Source: Macrostomum lignano (taxonomy: Eukaryota). From it: a DNA stretch of 64,000 bases. Below are positions 50,704 to 54,066 of the stretch, piece by piece; the stretch's first letter is position 1; the number at the start of each line of letters is the position of its first letter. Both the position numbers and the translations under genes were made by a program. Location: positions 7,621-71,620 of the forward strand of contig NIVC01003886.1 in the NCBI GenBank assembly GCA_002269645.1, read 5' to 3'. The notes beneath the pieces were generated by a model, which was not told the DNA's origin, ran no database searches, and worked only from the letters and a program-made list of their open reading frames with translations.

Positions 50704-51102
50704 ATGGCAAGTTTTTCCATACCACCAAGGCGTCAATTGAGACAAGTATTACATTGGCTAGCTTATGCTATAGGAATAAGCAGTCTCAGTCTTCTATTGT
50801 TATGGCTCTATGCTGGTCGCAATCCAGTGCATTATTTGTACAATATAAACTTAGATAGTATAGCTCAACTACACGTGCTGCCATTGACTGTGGCTGGTAC
50901 AGCCCTCTGCTTAGATGGCACTGCGCCAGCTGTCTATGTGTCCCACACTGGGCCCAATTGGATTGTCTATCTTGGCCAGGATTCTCTCTATTGGTGCCTC
51001 GATGAAGAGGATTGCTTAGCGCGTAGTCACACGCCGCAGGGTAGTAGCAAGTGGCTACCAGATAAGCTTGAGCTGCATGGGATATTGTCGAATTCGGCTG
51101 AG
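50704..51102 (+). CDS. Notum-like gene exon 1
   Basis: ATG 50704; hydrophobic WLAYAIGISSLSLLLLWLYA after basic RRQLRQ; donor GAG|gtaatt. Confidence 0.88.
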
Positions 51103-54066
51103 GTAATTTGATTAATTTGCACTGCTTACAGCTTAACAGCCAGGAAAGCCTATATCCCGCCCTTGGATCCTTTTTAGAACTTCAGAGTAGCAATCCAGTC
51201 TGCTCAAGGTTTGTCTCTTCTCTGCTTCCTAGTTGAATCTCCTCTCGCTTCTGCTCACTTCTGCTCTTCTTTCCTCTCTTCTCTCCTCTTTTCTTCTCGC
51301 TTCTACTTTATTCCCTCGCCTCTCATTTTTCTCACATCTCTCTTCCCTCCCTTGGCCCGCAGTCATGTGAGACTCGTAAAAAAAGCTCACCGACCCCTGG
51401 TCTAATTAATCCTATTTCTCATATATAGGCAGACAGGCAGGTACTGGGTTTTTTAAGTGTCCAAATTTATTATGCCAAATTGAAAACCAGTATTGCCAGC
51501 CGGCATCAGTCAATAAGATCAAAATCAAATTAAACACCAGCATCTTCGCCCTATCATCTACACTGCTGAGCCTCTCTGACCTACAGAAGTTGCACAAAAG
51601 TCTGCAGACTCACTGTTTTTACAAATTACTTAAATTTGACAATGGGTAGAATTTATTAAAGCAAGATTTGTCACGACACATGCTGTGACACAAGCCTAGA
51701 TAGGTAGATGGAATTATAGATAGATAGATAGATACATAGATAGATAGATAGATACATGGATAGATAGATAGATAGATACATAGATAGATAGATAGATACA
51801 TGGATAGATAGATAGATAGATAGATAGATAGATAGATAGATAGATAGATAGATAGATAGATAGATAGATAGATAGATACATAGATAGATAGATAGATAGA
51901 TAGATAGATAGATACATAGATAGATAGATAGATAGATAGATAGATAGATAGATAGATAGATAGATAGATACATAGATAGATAGATAGATAGATAGATAGA
52001 TAGATAGATAGATAGATAGATAGATAGATAGATAGATAGATAGATAGATAGATAGATAGATAGATAGATAGATAGATAGATACATAGGTAGATAGATAGA
52101 TAGATAGATAGATAGATAGATAGATAGATAGATATTGATTAATTGATAGCTACTTGTTGCAGCTTCAGCTTATATTTGTGCAAGAAATTGTCATCTCAAA
52201 TCAATTAGTTATTGCTTTCCTTCCCTTTTTCCCTTATTAGGTGAATCCAGATTTTCACACCTGGTCCAAAGCTGTAATTCACGCCTGCGACGGTAGCGGC
52301 TTTCTAGGCTATAGAGCCGCGCCTTTCCACGTCAACAATCAGGCATTGTACAGTCGAGGCTATCACGTGATCTGGCGCGTTCTTGACTGGCTGAGAAGGC
52401 GCTATGGCGACAGTATGCAGCCGCACGAGTCTCAGTTTCTATTTGTTGGCCAGGGCTCTAGCGGTATCGCTTTGATGTTGGCGGCTAGGGATATAATTGA
52501 CCAGTTTCCTTATAATCGGGTCAAGTTTGCTGTTGAGGGATCTGTGCTCATCGACAAGGAGGCCGTTTTGATTGACAGGTGCTTTATTTGTATTTTTGTT
52601 GCAATAGATTTGTTGTCTTAGTGGACCGCTGTGGTTCTTCAATTCACTCTATTTTACCTATAATCTTCTTCAGGTGCTTCAATGATCTTTTATCGCTTCT
52701 TCTTAGCGGCCCAGGCTCGATTTCCAGTGCAGTCATTATAGTTTGGGGTTAAATTGGAATCTCGGCTTGGCTCTGCTCGTGCAATTAATGCCCTTGAGGG
52801 CCAATTCCCAAGGCACAGTGAAGTGTACATGTCTAAGCGATAAATAAAGTATGAATGCGTACGTATCCGCGCGCTTGTGTGCCTGCTCGTGGGAGTCTAC
52901 GGAATGGGCAGCCATGCCTCTCGCCGGTTTTGTTGCAATGTCGCTTAAAGTACGGCTGTGTGCACACAACCCCGTCTTTCCTTAAGGATCTTCAGTGATC
53001 TATCAATCCTCTTTTCTTTGTGTCATTCAGTGACTTATCACCGACTTCCTTCAGGTCCTTCAGTGTCTTATCACCGACTTCCTTCAGGTCATTCAGTGAC
53101 TTATCACCGACTTCCTGCAGGTCCTTCAGTGATCTATCACCGACTTTCCTTCAGGTCCTTCAGTGATCTATCACTGATTTTCATTCAGGTCCTTCAGTGA
53201 TCTATCACCGATTTTTATTTAGTTCCTTCAGTGATCTATCACCGATTTTCATTTAGGTGCTTCAGTGATCTATCACCGATTTTTATTTAGTTCCTTCAGT
53301 GATCTATCACCGATTTTCATTTAGGTGCTTCAGTGATCTATCACCGATTTACATTCAGGTCCTTGAGTATTTTTAACCAACTCATTCAGGTCCTTCAGTG
53401 ATCTATCACCGAATTTCATTCAGGTCCTTCAGTGATCTTTCACCGATTTTCATTCAGGTCCTTCAGTTATCGACTGTCTTATTGCTTTCAGCCACTGCTA
53501 ACCCTGTAAATACAGATTGTAACTGTCTGTCCGCACCAATTCACAGGCTGCAGGCAATGATTAGCACGCATCACGTGACTAGAAATCCGCGTCTAAAAGA
53601 CTGCTTTGAAGAGTTTCCTGAAGGACAGCGTCAAAAAAATTCCTGGCGCTGCCTTCTACTGTCTAATCTGTTAAGCGATCGCATCGATGATGAAGGAACA
53701 AAGGAGCCGGCGTTTTTCTTCTCGGGTAGCAACTACGATAGGTGGCTGGCTATTAACGTGTACGCAGTCGCTTGTCCCCTTATTGACTGTCGCAGCGACG
53801 AGGAGAGCTATGCTAAATATGACCGATTGCGCAATGCCTTAATCGACGCTATCAATCCTATAGATAAGAAATCTAAGCGCGACTCAATCTGGATGTGCTC
53901 CTGTTGGTCTCGGGGTCACCTGGTGCACGATCAATTATTAACTAGAATCAACGTGGAAGGCTGGTCATTGGCCGAGGCTCTGAAAAAATGGTACTTCAAT
54001 GATCAGCCAATGAAGCTGCATTTGGTTGATGGAGCATTTCCGTCTAATCCTACTTGTCCAGTTTGA
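50704..54066 (+). CDS. Notum / pectin-acetylesterase family protein with N-terminal signal-anchor, probably catalytically inactive (3 exons, ~418 aa)
   Basis: Family motifs ALCLDGT, WC..EEDC..RS..GSS, HGILSN, NPDFHTW, CDGSGFLG, LYSRG, WRC, SNYDRW, SC, NPTC. Exons 50704-51102, 52241-52578 and 53547-54066 join in phase. Not called notum because the catalytic motifs are altered. Confidence 0.88.
51717..52133. repeat. (GATA)n microsatellite with CATA/CATG interruptions
   Basis: In intron 1 of the Notum-like gene. Confidence 0.99.
52241..52578 (+). CDS. Notum-like gene exon 2
   Basis: cccttattag|VNPDFHTW; donor AG|gtgctt (phase 2). Confidence 0.85.
52990..53467. repeat. 34-bp minisatellite (CTTCAGTGATCTATCACCGATTTTCATTCAGGTC), ~13 diverged copies
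   Basis: In intron 2 of the Notum-like gene. Confidence 0.93.
53547..54066 (+). CDS. Notum-like gene exon 3
   Basis: tcacag|G CTG (phase 2) to TGA at 54064-54066; ends DGAFPSNPTCPV. Confidence 0.83.

What the first reader, a model, noticed from the sequence alone, without database searches (positions are those of the whole stretch)
50704..54066. Membrane-anchored, apparently catalytically dead Notum-family protein (candidate Wnt-lipid decoy)
Seen in sequence: the ORF is intact and spliceable, with the family's Cys scaffold, CDG, NPDF, YD and NPTC motifs kept. Three catalytic elements are changed: the nucleophile elbow G-x-S-x-G reads GQGSSG (52448-52465; Gly at the Ser position when anchored on the flanking G..GIALML); the oxyanion segment (EGGWYC in Notum, EGGGWC in pectin acetylesterases) reads GQDSLYWC; and the catalytic His motif (ACLSH/SCFAH) reads SCWSR (Arg 53911-53913). 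The N-terminus is basic residues plus a hydrophobic helix, a type-II anchor rather than an obvious cleaved signal peptide. Established: Notum removes Wnt palmitoleate with a Ser-Asp-His triad and controls head/tail polarity in planarians. Inference: a conserved pseudoenzyme that binds lipidated Wnt or another acyl ligand at the cell surface without hydrolysing it.
Basis: partly seen in the sequence, partly recalled or inferred. Interest (0 to 1): 0.78.

Follow-up and report, generated by a model that had tools for sequence, protein, structure and literature searches.

The report
Catalytically dead flatworm PAE-like esterase
This Macrostomum lignano (flatworm) gene encodes a membrane-anchored protein with the fold of Notum and pectin acetylesterases but without the catalytic serine, histidine and oxyanion loop; it is not a Notum orthologue, so it is a likely pseudo-esterase of unknown ligand rather than a demonstrated Wnt decoy.

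Summary
A three-exon gene (50704-51102, 52241-52578, 53547-54066, + strand) encodes a 418-aa protein. It differs by one residue from Macrostomum lignano hypothetical protein PAA86706.1. It matches Pfam PAE (PF03283) at E=1.8e-35, and its AlphaFold2 model (pLDDT 90) is closest to Notum crystal structures. In an alignment with 143 homologues, the nucleophile Ser is Gly205, the catalytic His is Arg368, and the Gly-Gly oxyanion loop is replaced and lengthened by two residues. Asp310 and all ten conserved cysteines are kept.

The "Notum / Wnt decoy" reading is not supported. The protein scores 19 bits against a Notum profile and 223 bits against animal non-Notum "pectin-acetylesterase-like" proteins from amphioxus, echinoderms, a hemichordate, Lingula and corals. 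It never groups with Notum in 100 bootstrap trees. Its diagnostic motifs are the PAE versions. The N-terminal membrane anchor is common across that clade.

My reading is a fast-evolving, probably functional pseudo-esterase with an unknown ligand. Selection and expression could be tested only indirectly. A related echinoderm clade lost the triad independently. Interest is moderate to low.

The parts
50704..51102 (+). Exon 1 (residues 1-133): start codon, basic N-tail, hydrophobic anchor, CLDG motif, altered oxyanion loop. Donor is GAG|gtaatt.
   Evidence: Same model as PAA86706.1.
50746..50814 (+). Hydrophobic segment, about residues 15-37 (VLHWLAYAIGISSLSLLLLWLYA), preceded by R9, R10 and R13. 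Predicted signal anchor with N-terminus inside (type II).
   Evidence: Kyte-Doolittle 19-mer mean 1.85 with a +3 N-flank. AF2 helix 9-38. Heuristic only.
50974..50997 (+). Oxyanion-loop segment G91-C98, GQDSLYWC. The family consensus is GGG/A-WC and Notum has GGWYC. The GG is replaced by Q92-D93 and there is a 2-residue insertion.
   Evidence: Role of Gly126-Gly127-Trp128 amides in Notum: PMC8172013.
51103..52240 (+). Intron 1 (GT..AG). Contains a (TAGA)n microsatellite of about 110 copies at 51697-52134.
52241..52578 (+). Exon 2 (residues 134-245 plus 2 nt of codon 246): NPDF, CDG, and strand beta5 with the degenerate nucleophile elbow.
   Evidence: 100% identical in the second genomic copy L001.
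52448..52465 (+). Degenerate nucleophile elbow G203-Q-G205-S-S-G208. The family has G-x-S-A-G-G. Gly205 occupies the nucleophile position.
   Evidence: MSA. DSSP of the AF2 model gives strand 198-204, G205 coil, helix 206-221. The NOTUM control model gives strand 228-234, S235, helix 236-254.
52579..53546 (+). Intron 2 (GT..AG). Contains a 34-bp minisatellite of about 15 copies at 52972-53471.
53547..54066 (+). Exon 3 (last nt of codon 246 to the stop at 54064-54066): retained Asp motif, degenerate His motif, C-terminal NPTC.
   Evidence: 100% identical in L001.
53737..53739 (+). Asp310 codon (NYDRW). This is the retained acid of the former triad, aligned with Notum D340.
   Evidence: Motif NxayDxxQ: PMC5465549.
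53911..53913 (+). Arg368 codon, at the position of the catalytic His (SCxxH becomes SCWSR). His370 follows at 53917-53919.

Best explanation
The locus is an expressed, lineage-specific and fast-evolving member of the animal non-Notum "pectin-acetylesterase-like" branch of the PAE/Notum family (Pfam PF03283, CAZy CE13).

Shown:
- It is a single-pass protein with a short basic N-tail, one hydrophobic helix and a roughly 370-residue alpha/beta-hydrolase domain.
- The domain keeps the family's ten cysteines and core motifs.
- The Ser nucleophile is Gly205, the His base is Arg368, and the Gly-Gly oxyanion loop is rebuilt.

Inferred:
- It cannot carry out Ser-His-Asp ester hydrolysis, so it is a pseudo-esterase.
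- The domain faces the lumen of the secretory pathway or the outside of the cell (type II topology, disulfide scaffold).

Proposed mechanism (not tested):
- It keeps the substrate cleft of its active ancestors.
- It binds an O-acetylated or O-acylated glycoconjugate or protein, or an active paralogue or partner, without turning it over.
- It would therefore act as a tethered binding, shielding or competing module in the Golgi or at the cell surface.

A Wnt ligand is possible, but nothing found here points to it.
For: Family and fold:
- Pfam PAE matches at E=1.8e-35.
- The AF2 model has pLDDT 90.2 and pTM 0.85. All top Foldseek PDB hits are Notum, with TM about 0.8 normalised to the target and 19-20% identity.

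Loss of the catalytic apparatus:
- Shown by alignment with 143 homologues and by secondary-structure register.
- Of 49 columns that are at least 80% conserved, 35 are kept, including all Cys.
- 14 are lost. Seven of these are G92, G93, S205, A206, G207, F236 and H368. I place F236 at the active site only by its alignment with a Notum pocket residue, recalled from memory.

Placement:
- The best relatives are at E=1e-36 to 1e-30 and 29-31% identity. They are PAE-like proteins of Lingula, Montipora, Branchiostoma, Anneissia, Holothuria, Diadema, Ptychodera, Amphiura and Acanthaster.
- HMM scores are 223 bits for the PAE-like clade and 19 bits for Notum.
- It is sister to the Branchiostoma pair P0022/P0117 in 56 of 100 bootstraps and never sister to Notum.

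Evidence that the gene is maintained:
- The ORF is intact in the window and in a second genomic copy.
- It is only about 30% identical to its nearest homologues, yet every conserved Cys and a confidently predicted fold are kept.
- The deposited gene model comes from an annotation built entirely on RNA-seq (PMC5730564).

Other points:
- Signal-anchor-like N-termini are the rule in the clade.
- A monophyletic echinoderm group (crinoid, urchin, sea cucumber) has lost Ser, Asp and His and is still intact. Dead PAE-likes can therefore persist for a long time.
Against: - No orthologue closer than about 33% identity was found, so purifying selection since the loss of catalysis is not demonstrated.
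- The two M. lignano copies differ at only two coding sites, one non-synonymous and one synonymous.
- The protein has the longest branch in the tree (root-to-tip 1.99 against a median of 1.54) and is the most divergent at consensus columns. That also fits relaxed constraint.
- I could not read the model's coordinates, so the triad geometry of Ser206/Ser207 and His370 was not measured.
- No expression level, tissue or phenotype data were found.
- The ligand, and even ligand binding itself, are inference.
Confidence: 0.6

Rival explanations
1. It is a membrane-tethered dead Notum that binds the palmitoleate of Wnt at the cell surface without cleaving it, and so sequesters Wnt or presents it.
For: - The fold is that of Notum.
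- The catalytic residues are lost while the scaffold is kept.
- Notum-dependent Wnt regulation is important in flatworms (papers found).
- Phe236Leu lies at the position aligned with a Notum pocket residue. This is an alignment-based hint only.
Against: - It is not in the Notum clade. It scores 19 against 223 bits, gives 0 of 100 bootstraps with Notum, and matches PDB Notum only at E=3.6e-5 over half the protein.
- All Notum-specific motifs are replaced by the PAE versions.
- The relatives have no known Wnt link.
- Conservation of the lipid pocket was not testable.
- Neighbouring genes (UNC80 and a BTB protein) give no pathway hint.
Confidence: 0.06
2. It is still a hydrolase and uses a shifted, non-canonical active site. 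Ser206 or Ser207 would be the nucleophile, His370 the base and the retained Asp310 the acid.
For: - Two serines directly follow Gly205, and a His lies two residues after Arg368.
- Asp310 is conserved.
- Several homologues show the same Ser-Ala to Ala/Gly-Ser swap. One of them, P0104 (GCASGA), keeps His and Asp.
Against: - Neither register gives a Sm-x-Nu-x-Sm elbow. Gln204 would sit at Nu-2, or Ile209 at Nu+2.
- The AF2 model starts the helix at Ser206, exactly as after the nucleophile in the NOTUM control.
- The side chain at Nu+1 points away from the active site in alpha/beta hydrolases (general knowledge).
- The oxyanion loop is also rebuilt, with a 2-residue insertion and no Gly-Gly.
- Three independent hits on one catalytic machine are hard to compensate.
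Confidence: 0.1
3. It is a decaying gene. It would be a recently released duplicate or orphan under relaxed selection, transcribed but without function, and its ORF has simply not yet been hit.
For: - It has the longest branch and the most consensus losses of the 144 sequences compared.
- No orthologue was found in any other flatworm in the databases searched.
- It has no N-glycosylation sequon in the ectodomain (read from the sequence).
- Deposited variants with frameshifts exist (P0004, P0005).
Against: - The frameshifted variants come from older assemblies. L002 is collinear with the window over 10.6 kb, with 2 mismatches but 23 single-base indels. That is an assembly-error signature, not decay.
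- 418 codons are stop-free across three correctly spliced exons in two copies.
- Changes cluster at the active site, while all 10 Cys and the core motifs survive about 70% sequence divergence.
- The fold is predicted with pLDDT 90.
Confidence: 0.17

Closest known systems
Animal non-Notum "pectin acetylesterase-like" proteins, for example Lingula anatina XP_013416559 ("pectin acetylesterase 5"), Branchiostoma XP_078699599 and CAH1224480, Acanthaster XP_022110445 and Ptychodera XP_070564855. All are uncharacterised.
   Same: - Best sequence matches: E=1e-36 to 1e-30, 27-34% identity, and an HMM score of 223 bits.
- Same PF03283 domain and same Cys scaffold.
- Same PAE-type motifs: CLDG, WC, CDG, NPDF, YDxW, NPTC.
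- Same architecture: N-tail, hydrophobic anchor, then the domain.
   Different: - Most of them keep GxSAGG, the GG oxyanion loop and SCxxH, so they are presumably active. The flatworm protein has Gly205, Arg368 and a rebuilt loop.
- Its anchor lies nearer the N-terminus.
- It is the most divergent sequence of the set.
Echinoderm triad-less PAE-like clade: Anneissia japonica XP_033102667, Diadema setosum XP_072169053 and Holothuria leucospilota KAJ8049785.
   Same: - Same clade of anchored PAE-like proteins.
- The nucleophile Ser is replaced by Ala or Gly, followed by Ser in two of the three and Thr in Holothuria (GTASGG, GTGSGG, GTGTGA).
- The oxyanion GG is degenerate and the His is lost.
   Different: - The loss is independent. 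The flatworm protein never groups with them in 100 bootstraps.
- They also lost the Asp (to Asn or Glu), which the flatworm protein keeps.
- They are conserved across three echinoderm classes at 37-40% identity. No orthologue of the flatworm gene is known.
Notum (palmitoleoyl-protein carboxylesterase; human Q6P988; PDB 4UZ1, 4UZQ, 4UZK)
   Same: - Same Pfam family and fold.
- It is the closest solved structure (TM about 0.8).
- It shares a disulfide-rich extracellular alpha/beta-hydrolase domain, and the Asp motif is aligned.
   Different: - Identity is only 19-24%, and the Notum HMM gives 19 bits.
- It is a separate clade.
- Notum has the S232/D340/H389 triad, the GGWYC oxyanion loop, a cleaved signal peptide and a defined palmitoleate pocket (PMC8172013).
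- None of these is present or demonstrable here.
Fish notum1b, annotated "inactive palmitoleoyl-protein carboxylesterase notum1b"
   Same: It is a PF03283 member that database annotation labels inactive.
   Different: - It is a true Notum paralogue, about 70-79% identical to human NOTUM.
- It keeps GSSAGG and ACLSH (rows P0296 and P0243).
- Its "inactive" label therefore does not rest on triad loss.
Plant pectin acetylesterases (CE13; AtPAE8 and others)
   Same: They carry the motifs GCSxG, NxayDxxQ and HCQ and the GGGWC loop. The flatworm protein's residual motifs resemble these rather than Notum's (PMC5465549).
   Different: Plant PAEs are secreted active enzymes that act on cell-wall pectin. 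Animals lack that substrate, and the flatworm protein lacks the Ser and the His.

Membership tests
PAE/Notum fold family (Pfam PF03283, CAZy CE13) | Significant full-length match to the PF03283 profile | tested here: met
   E=1.8e-35, 123 bits (cut-off 26.6). Residues 54-398 match profile positions 9-352 of 355.
PAE/Notum fold family (Pfam PF03283, CAZy CE13) | Alpha/beta-hydrolase fold that superposes on Notum | tested here: met
   AF2 pLDDT 90.2 and pTM 0.85. The 50 Foldseek PDB hits listed are all Notum, E about 1e-20, TM 0.79-0.84 normalised to the target.
PAE/Notum fold family (Pfam PF03283, CAZy CE13) | Conserved cysteine (disulfide) scaffold and core motifs CxDG, CDG/CSSD, NPxF, NPxC | tested here: met
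   C69, C98, C104, C149, C265, C281, C322, C327, C365 and C416 are all kept. 35 of 49 consensus columns are kept.
PAE/Notum fold family (Pfam PF03283, CAZy CE13) | Ser-Asp-His triad in GxSxG, (Y/F)Dxx(Q) and (S/A)CxxH, plus the Gly-Gly oxyanion loop | tested here: not met
   Ser is Gly205, His is Arg368 and GG is Gln92-Asp93 with a 2-aa insertion. Only Asp310 is kept. It is therefore a family member by descent and fold, but not as an enzyme.
Notum orthologue group (palmitoleoyl-protein carboxylesterase) | Groups with Notum rather than with other PF03283 members | tested here: not met
   Notum HMM 19 bits against 223 bits for the PAE-like HMM. Sister to Notum in 0 of 100 bootstraps. PDB Notum matches at E=3.6e-5 over residues 64-231 only. 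The Notum set was vertebrate only, plus fly through the PDB.
Notum orthologue group (palmitoleoyl-protein carboxylesterase) | Notum-specific motifs CNDG, EGGWYC, YCSSD, FDEAQ, ACLSHE | tested here: not met
   It has CLDG..YWC, ACDG, YDRWL and SCWSRG, which are the PAE-type versions.
Notum orthologue group (palmitoleoyl-protein carboxylesterase) | Cleaved N-terminal signal peptide and a secreted protein | tested here: inconclusive
   The hydrophobic core is about 20 residues long and follows a 14-17-residue basic N-region. AF2 predicts a helix over 9-38. This favours a signal anchor, but no dedicated predictor was available.
Notum orthologue group (palmitoleoyl-protein carboxylesterase) | Hydrophobic pocket of about 380 cubic angstroms that fits cis-C16:1, and binding or deacylation of Wnt | not testable with these tools
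   I could not read the model's coordinates, and no biochemical data exist.
Animal anchored PAE-like clade (unnamed, uncharacterised) | Best similarity and tree placement among the amphioxus, echinoderm, hemichordate, brachiopod and coral PAE-like proteins | tested here: met
   The exact sister group is weak (56% with Branchiostoma P0022/P0117).
Animal anchored PAE-like clade (unnamed, uncharacterised) | Hydrophobic signal anchor N-terminal to the domain, with a positive N-flank | tested here: met
   The Kyte-Doolittle 19-mer mean is 1.8-3.4 in 14 of the 16 clade members examined besides Mlig. Twelve of these are internal (start at residue 37-114) and two are N-terminal (start at residue 8-10). 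Mlig scores 1.85 at residues 15-33 with a +3 flank. Heuristic.
Pseudoenzyme (functional, non-catalytic enzyme homologue) | Catalytic residues lost while the fold is retained | tested here: met
Pseudoenzyme (functional, non-catalytic enzyme homologue) | Expressed and under purifying selection | tested here: inconclusive
   The gene model comes from an RNA-seq-based annotation. The ORF is intact in two copies, which differ at only 2 coding sites. No orthologues were available for dN/dS.

The most novel reading that the evidence does not exclude
The protein is a membrane-tethered, non-hydrolysing acyl-ligand trap. It would capture lipidated Wnt, or another O-acylated secreted signal, at the surface of flatworm cells. 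That would be a new kind of extracellular signalling regulator, derived from an esterase lineage separate from Notum.
Probability: 0.06. Interest if true: 0.75.

Novelty: new variant of a known kind. Interest (0 to 1): 0.35.

Why it matters
If it is functional, this is a triad-less member of the PAE/Notum family. I found no paper describing one.

More broadly, it draws attention to an unstudied animal clade of membrane-anchored PAE-like proteins. These occur in amphioxus, echinoderms, a hemichordate, a brachiopod, corals and now a flatworm. Some are mislabelled "NOTUM" or "pectin acetylesterase N-like" in databases. At least two lineages in the clade have lost catalysis independently.

Finding the substrate of the active members could reveal a new extracellular or Golgi de-esterification step in animals. 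M. lignano is transgenic and amenable to RNAi, so the dead member can be tested directly.

It does not, as it stands, bear on Wnt or regeneration biology.

Tried and rejected
- Exon-3 acceptor at 53492 or 53516: out of frame with the 52578 donor. Only 53547 reproduces the deposited 418-aa protein.
- Other copies in the window: tblastn found none.
- Close orthologues for dN/dS: the word-indexed search found only the M. lignano cluster and one 26%-identical protein. The exhaustive HMMER search found nothing above about 31% identity over the full length. A profile search with 17 clade members returned only 4 proteins. All three were unproductive.
- dN/dS between M. lignano copies: there are only 2 coding differences, so it is not informative.
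- Frameshifted deposited variants as a sign of pseudogenisation: rejected. L002 is the same locus with 23 single-base indels in 10.6 kb, which is an assembly-error pattern.
- Expression data: the gene identifiers Mlig020310 and Mlig012638 appear neither in the text library nor in the supplements of four M. lignano papers.
- Literature on Notum in Macrostomum, or on PAE/Notum pseudoenzymes: nothing specific.
- Direct triad geometry: I could not read the model's coordinates. Only DSSP, pLDDT and Foldseek summaries were available. I used a NOTUM control model to calibrate the strand-nucleophile-helix register instead.
- M. lignano's own Notum orthologue was not retrieved. The Notum search listed only vertebrates.
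Full report
**What is there.** The window is genomic DNA of the free-living flatworm Macrostomum lignano. The 418-aa product of the locus is 100% identical over residues 50-418 to a UniParc entry. It differs by one residue (P7T) from GenBank PAA86706.1, "hypothetical protein BOX15_Mlig020310g1".

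The gene has three exons with canonical GT-AG introns: 50704-51102, 52241-52578 and 53547-54066. The exon-3 acceptor that keeps the frame is cacag|G at 53547. The stronger-looking acceptors at 53492 and 53516 are out of frame. Intron 1 carries a (TAGA)n microsatellite of about 110 copies, and intron 2 a 34-bp minisatellite. There is only one copy in the window.

The flanking genes are UNC80 on the minus strand (exons between 2059 and 46556) and a BTB-domain gene starting near 58257. Neither suggests a pathway.

**Checking the observation.** Pfam assigns the protein to PAE (PF03283) at E=1.8e-35 over almost the whole profile. I aligned it with 50 homologues and then with 143 homologues plus six vertebrate Notums.

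The family's catalytic motifs are GxSAGG (nucleophile), (Y/F)Dxx(Q) (acid) and (S/A)CxxH (base). These are the motifs described for plant PAEs and for human Notum S232/D340/H389 (PMC5465549; PMC8172013). The flatworm protein compares as follows:
- **Nucleophile elbow.** It reads G203-Q-G205-S-S-G208, so Gly205 sits in the 97%-conserved Ser column.
- **Base.** It reads S-C365-W-S-R368-G-H370, so Arg368 sits in the 97%-conserved His column.
- **Oxyanion loop.** The family has GG(G/A)WC and Notum has GGWYC. In Notum the backbone amides of this loop form the oxyanion hole. Here the loop reads GQDSLYWC, with the two glycines replaced and two residues inserted.
- **Acid.** Asp310 (NYDRW) is kept.

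Across the 49 alignment columns that are at least 80% conserved, the protein keeps 35. These include all ten conserved cysteines and CLDG, CDG, NPDF, RG and NPTC. It loses 14, of which seven (G92, G93, S205, A206, G207, F236, H368) I place in or next to the active site. F236 is placed there only by its alignment with a Notum pocket residue, recalled from memory.

**Structure.** An AlphaFold2 model built on the 51-sequence alignment is confident (mean pLDDT 90.2, pTM 0.85). All listed Foldseek matches in the PDB are Notum structures, with TM about 0.8 normalised to the target and 19-20% identity.

I could not read the model's coordinates, so I used the DSSP register instead. The model has strand 198-204, Gly205 as the single coil residue, and helix 206-221. 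A control model of a true NOTUM (P0200), made with the same tool, has strand 228-234, the known nucleophile Ser235 (human S232) as the single coil residue, and helix 236-254. Gly205 therefore occupies the nucleophile apex.

Ser206 and Ser207 lie in the first turn of the helix. Neither gives a small-x-Nu-x-small elbow, because Gln204 would sit at Nu-2 or Ile209 at Nu+2. An alternative Ser207/His370/Asp310 site is unlikely, but it is not excluded without coordinates or an assay.

**It is not a Notum.**
- Sequence search of the PDB finds only Drosophila Notum, at E=3.6e-5 and over residues 64-231.
- An exhaustive HMMER scan of 1.8 billion representative proteins gives 1537 hits. The best non-self hits are at E=1e-36 to 1e-30 and 29-31% identity.
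- The hits that carry names are uncharacterised animal proteins labelled "pectin acetylesterase N-like" or "uncharacterized". In one Branchiostoma lanceolatum annotation they are labelled "NOTUM".
- They come from Lingula, Montipora, Branchiostoma, Anneissia, Holothuria, Diadema, Ptychodera, Amphiura and Acanthaster.
- An HMM of 16 such proteins, built without the flatworm sequence, scores it at 223 bits. An HMM of signal-peptide-type PAEs scores 197 bits, and an HMM of 17 vertebrate Notums scores 19 bits.
- In 100 neighbour-joining bootstraps the protein is sister to the Branchiostoma pair P0022/P0117 in 56. It is never sister to Notum and never sister to the triad-less echinoderm proteins. 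Deeper placement is unresolved.
- Motif by motif it carries the PAE versions, not the Notum versions.

**Membrane anchor.** Residues 9-13 carry three arginines. A roughly 20-residue hydrophobic stretch follows (Kyte-Doolittle mean 1.85 for residues 15-33), which AF2 models as part of a helix over 9-38. This favours an N-in signal anchor (type II), but a long cleaved signal peptide is not excluded.

Most relatives in the clade have an internal hydrophobic segment that starts 37-114 residues from the N-terminus, usually with a positively charged N-flank. Anchoring is therefore ancestral for the clade and not special to this gene. A short tail, an anchor and a lumenal domain is also the classical topology of Golgi glycan-modifying enzymes (general knowledge). 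"Cell surface" is therefore an assumption.

**Is it a living gene?**
- The Mlig_3_7 annotation that produced PAA86706.1 was built entirely from RNA-seq-derived transcripts (PMC5730564). A deposited model with exactly these junctions therefore implies transcription and splicing. I found no expression level, tissue or phenotype data.
- A second genomic copy (L001, NIVC01000268) has an intact ORF with two coding differences: P7T and a synonymous change in codon 41. Unique flanking DNA differs by about 0.4-0.7%. That is too few changes for dN/dS.
- The frameshifted deposited proteins (P0004, P0005) are not evidence of decay. L002 (NIVC01000245) is the same locus as the window, collinear over 10.6 kb with 2 mismatches but 23 single-base indels, two of which fall in the CDS. 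That is the pattern of long-read assembly errors.
- The strongest argument for function is indirect. The protein shares only about 30% identity with its closest relatives, yet it keeps every structural cysteine, the core motifs and a confidently predicted fold, and its losses cluster at the catalytic site.
- Against this, it has the longest branch in the tree (1.99 against a median of 1.54) and the most consensus losses of all 144 sequences. No orthologue from another flatworm was found.

**How it most likely works.**
- Shown: family membership, fold, loss of Ser, His and the oxyanion loop, retention of Asp and the disulfide scaffold, and an N-terminal hydrophobic helix.
- Inferred: no Ser-hydrolase activity, and a lumenal or extracellular orientation.
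- Proposed: a tethered, non-catalytic binding module. It would retain the ancestral cleft and bind an O-acetylated or O-acylated glycoconjugate or protein, or a partner enzyme, without turnover.
- The substrate of the active clade members is unknown, so the ligand class cannot be named. Wnt palmitoleate is one possibility among many, and I give it about 6%.

**Parallel case seen on the way.** Three echinoderm proteins (crinoid Anneissia, urchin Diadema, sea cucumber Holothuria) form a clade in the tree. They are 37-40% identical to each other. They have lost the Ser (GTASGG, GTGSGG, GTGTGA), the Asp (to Asn or Glu), the His (to Glu or Asn) and the GG loop. Their survival across echinoderm classes shows that triad-less PAE-like proteins can be maintained for a long time, which makes the pseudoenzyme reading of the flatworm gene more credible. 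The loss in the flatworm is independent.

**Verdict.** The gene is a new, catalytically degenerate, membrane-anchored variant within a known fold family. It belongs to an uncharacterised animal PAE-like clade, not to Notum. Interest is moderate to low until a ligand, an expression pattern or a phenotype is known.

Noticed in passing
window 2059-46556 (minus strand): A large multi-exon UNC80 gene (NALCN channel complex subunit). ORFs at 2059-4998 (UNC80_C, E=1e-217), 19749-20486 and 33583-34284 (UNC80 central region) and 45210-46556 (UNC80_N, E=2.5e-61).
   Followed up: partly
window 19749-20486 and 21475-21969 (minus strand): Two nearby ORFs share near-identical peptide stretches (AEYAGDKKYSIFRRRSMFP; SDVV..NTT.SLNDA). 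This looks like a local duplication of one UNC80 exon, either alternative exons or a degenerate duplicate.
   Followed up: no
window 13267-13797 (+): A 176-aa ORF inside a UNC80 intron has a GIY-YIG-like motif (GVIYKFSC...HIGKTERHLHTRVKEH). It is reminiscent of the endonuclease domain of Penelope-like retroelements. There was no Pfam hit at E<=0.01, so this is a guess from the motif only.
   Followed up: partly
window 55587-63874: A dense run of minisatellite arrays with periods of 33, 31, 23, 24/48, 21 and 29 bp and 14-57 copies each. They create long spurious ORFs in several frames on both strands. GC rises to about 0.53-0.55 and GC skew is strong there.
   Followed up: partly
window 58257-58919 (+): First exon of a BTB/POZ (BTB_3, E=4e-9) gene downstream of the PAE-like gene. 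It corresponds to the 569-aa product annotated in both older-assembly loci.
   Followed up: partly
window 51697-52134 and 52972-53471: Intron 1 holds a (TAGA)n microsatellite of about 110 copies. Intron 2 holds a 34-bp minisatellite of about 15 copies. Both differ in length between the two genomic copies.
   Followed up: partly
L002 (NIVC01000245.1) against window 47400-58000: The older Mlig_3_7 assembly of the same locus has 23 single-base indels and only 2 mismatches in 10.6 kb. Two indels fall in the CDS and produce the truncated or frameshifted database proteins PAA87155.1 (152 aa). The analogous frameshift in A0A1I8JL55, from another assembly, sits at the GGGG run after codon 368.
   Followed up: yes
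Related proteins P0015 (Anneissia XP_033102667), P0036 (Diadema XP_072169053), P0052 (Holothuria KAJ8049785): A monophyletic echinoderm group of anchored PAE-like proteins has lost Ser, Asp, His and the oxyanion GG, yet stays intact across three classes. It looks like an old, undescribed pseudo-esterase clade.
   Followed up: partly
Related proteins P0013, P0040, P0117, P0176 (Branchiostoma lanceolatum CAH12xxxxx): Several non-Notum PAE-like proteins are named "NOTUM" in one amphioxus annotation, while NCBI calls their orthologues "pectin acetylesterase 11-like". Neither name is supported by function, and the NOTUM label is probably an over-annotation.
   Followed up: partly
Related protein P0104 (unnamed, 494 aa): Its elbow reads GCASGA, a Ser/Ala swap like the dead proteins, but it keeps the Asp and His motifs. 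It may be an active enzyme with the nucleophile shifted by one residue, which bears on the shifted-register rival.
   Followed up: no
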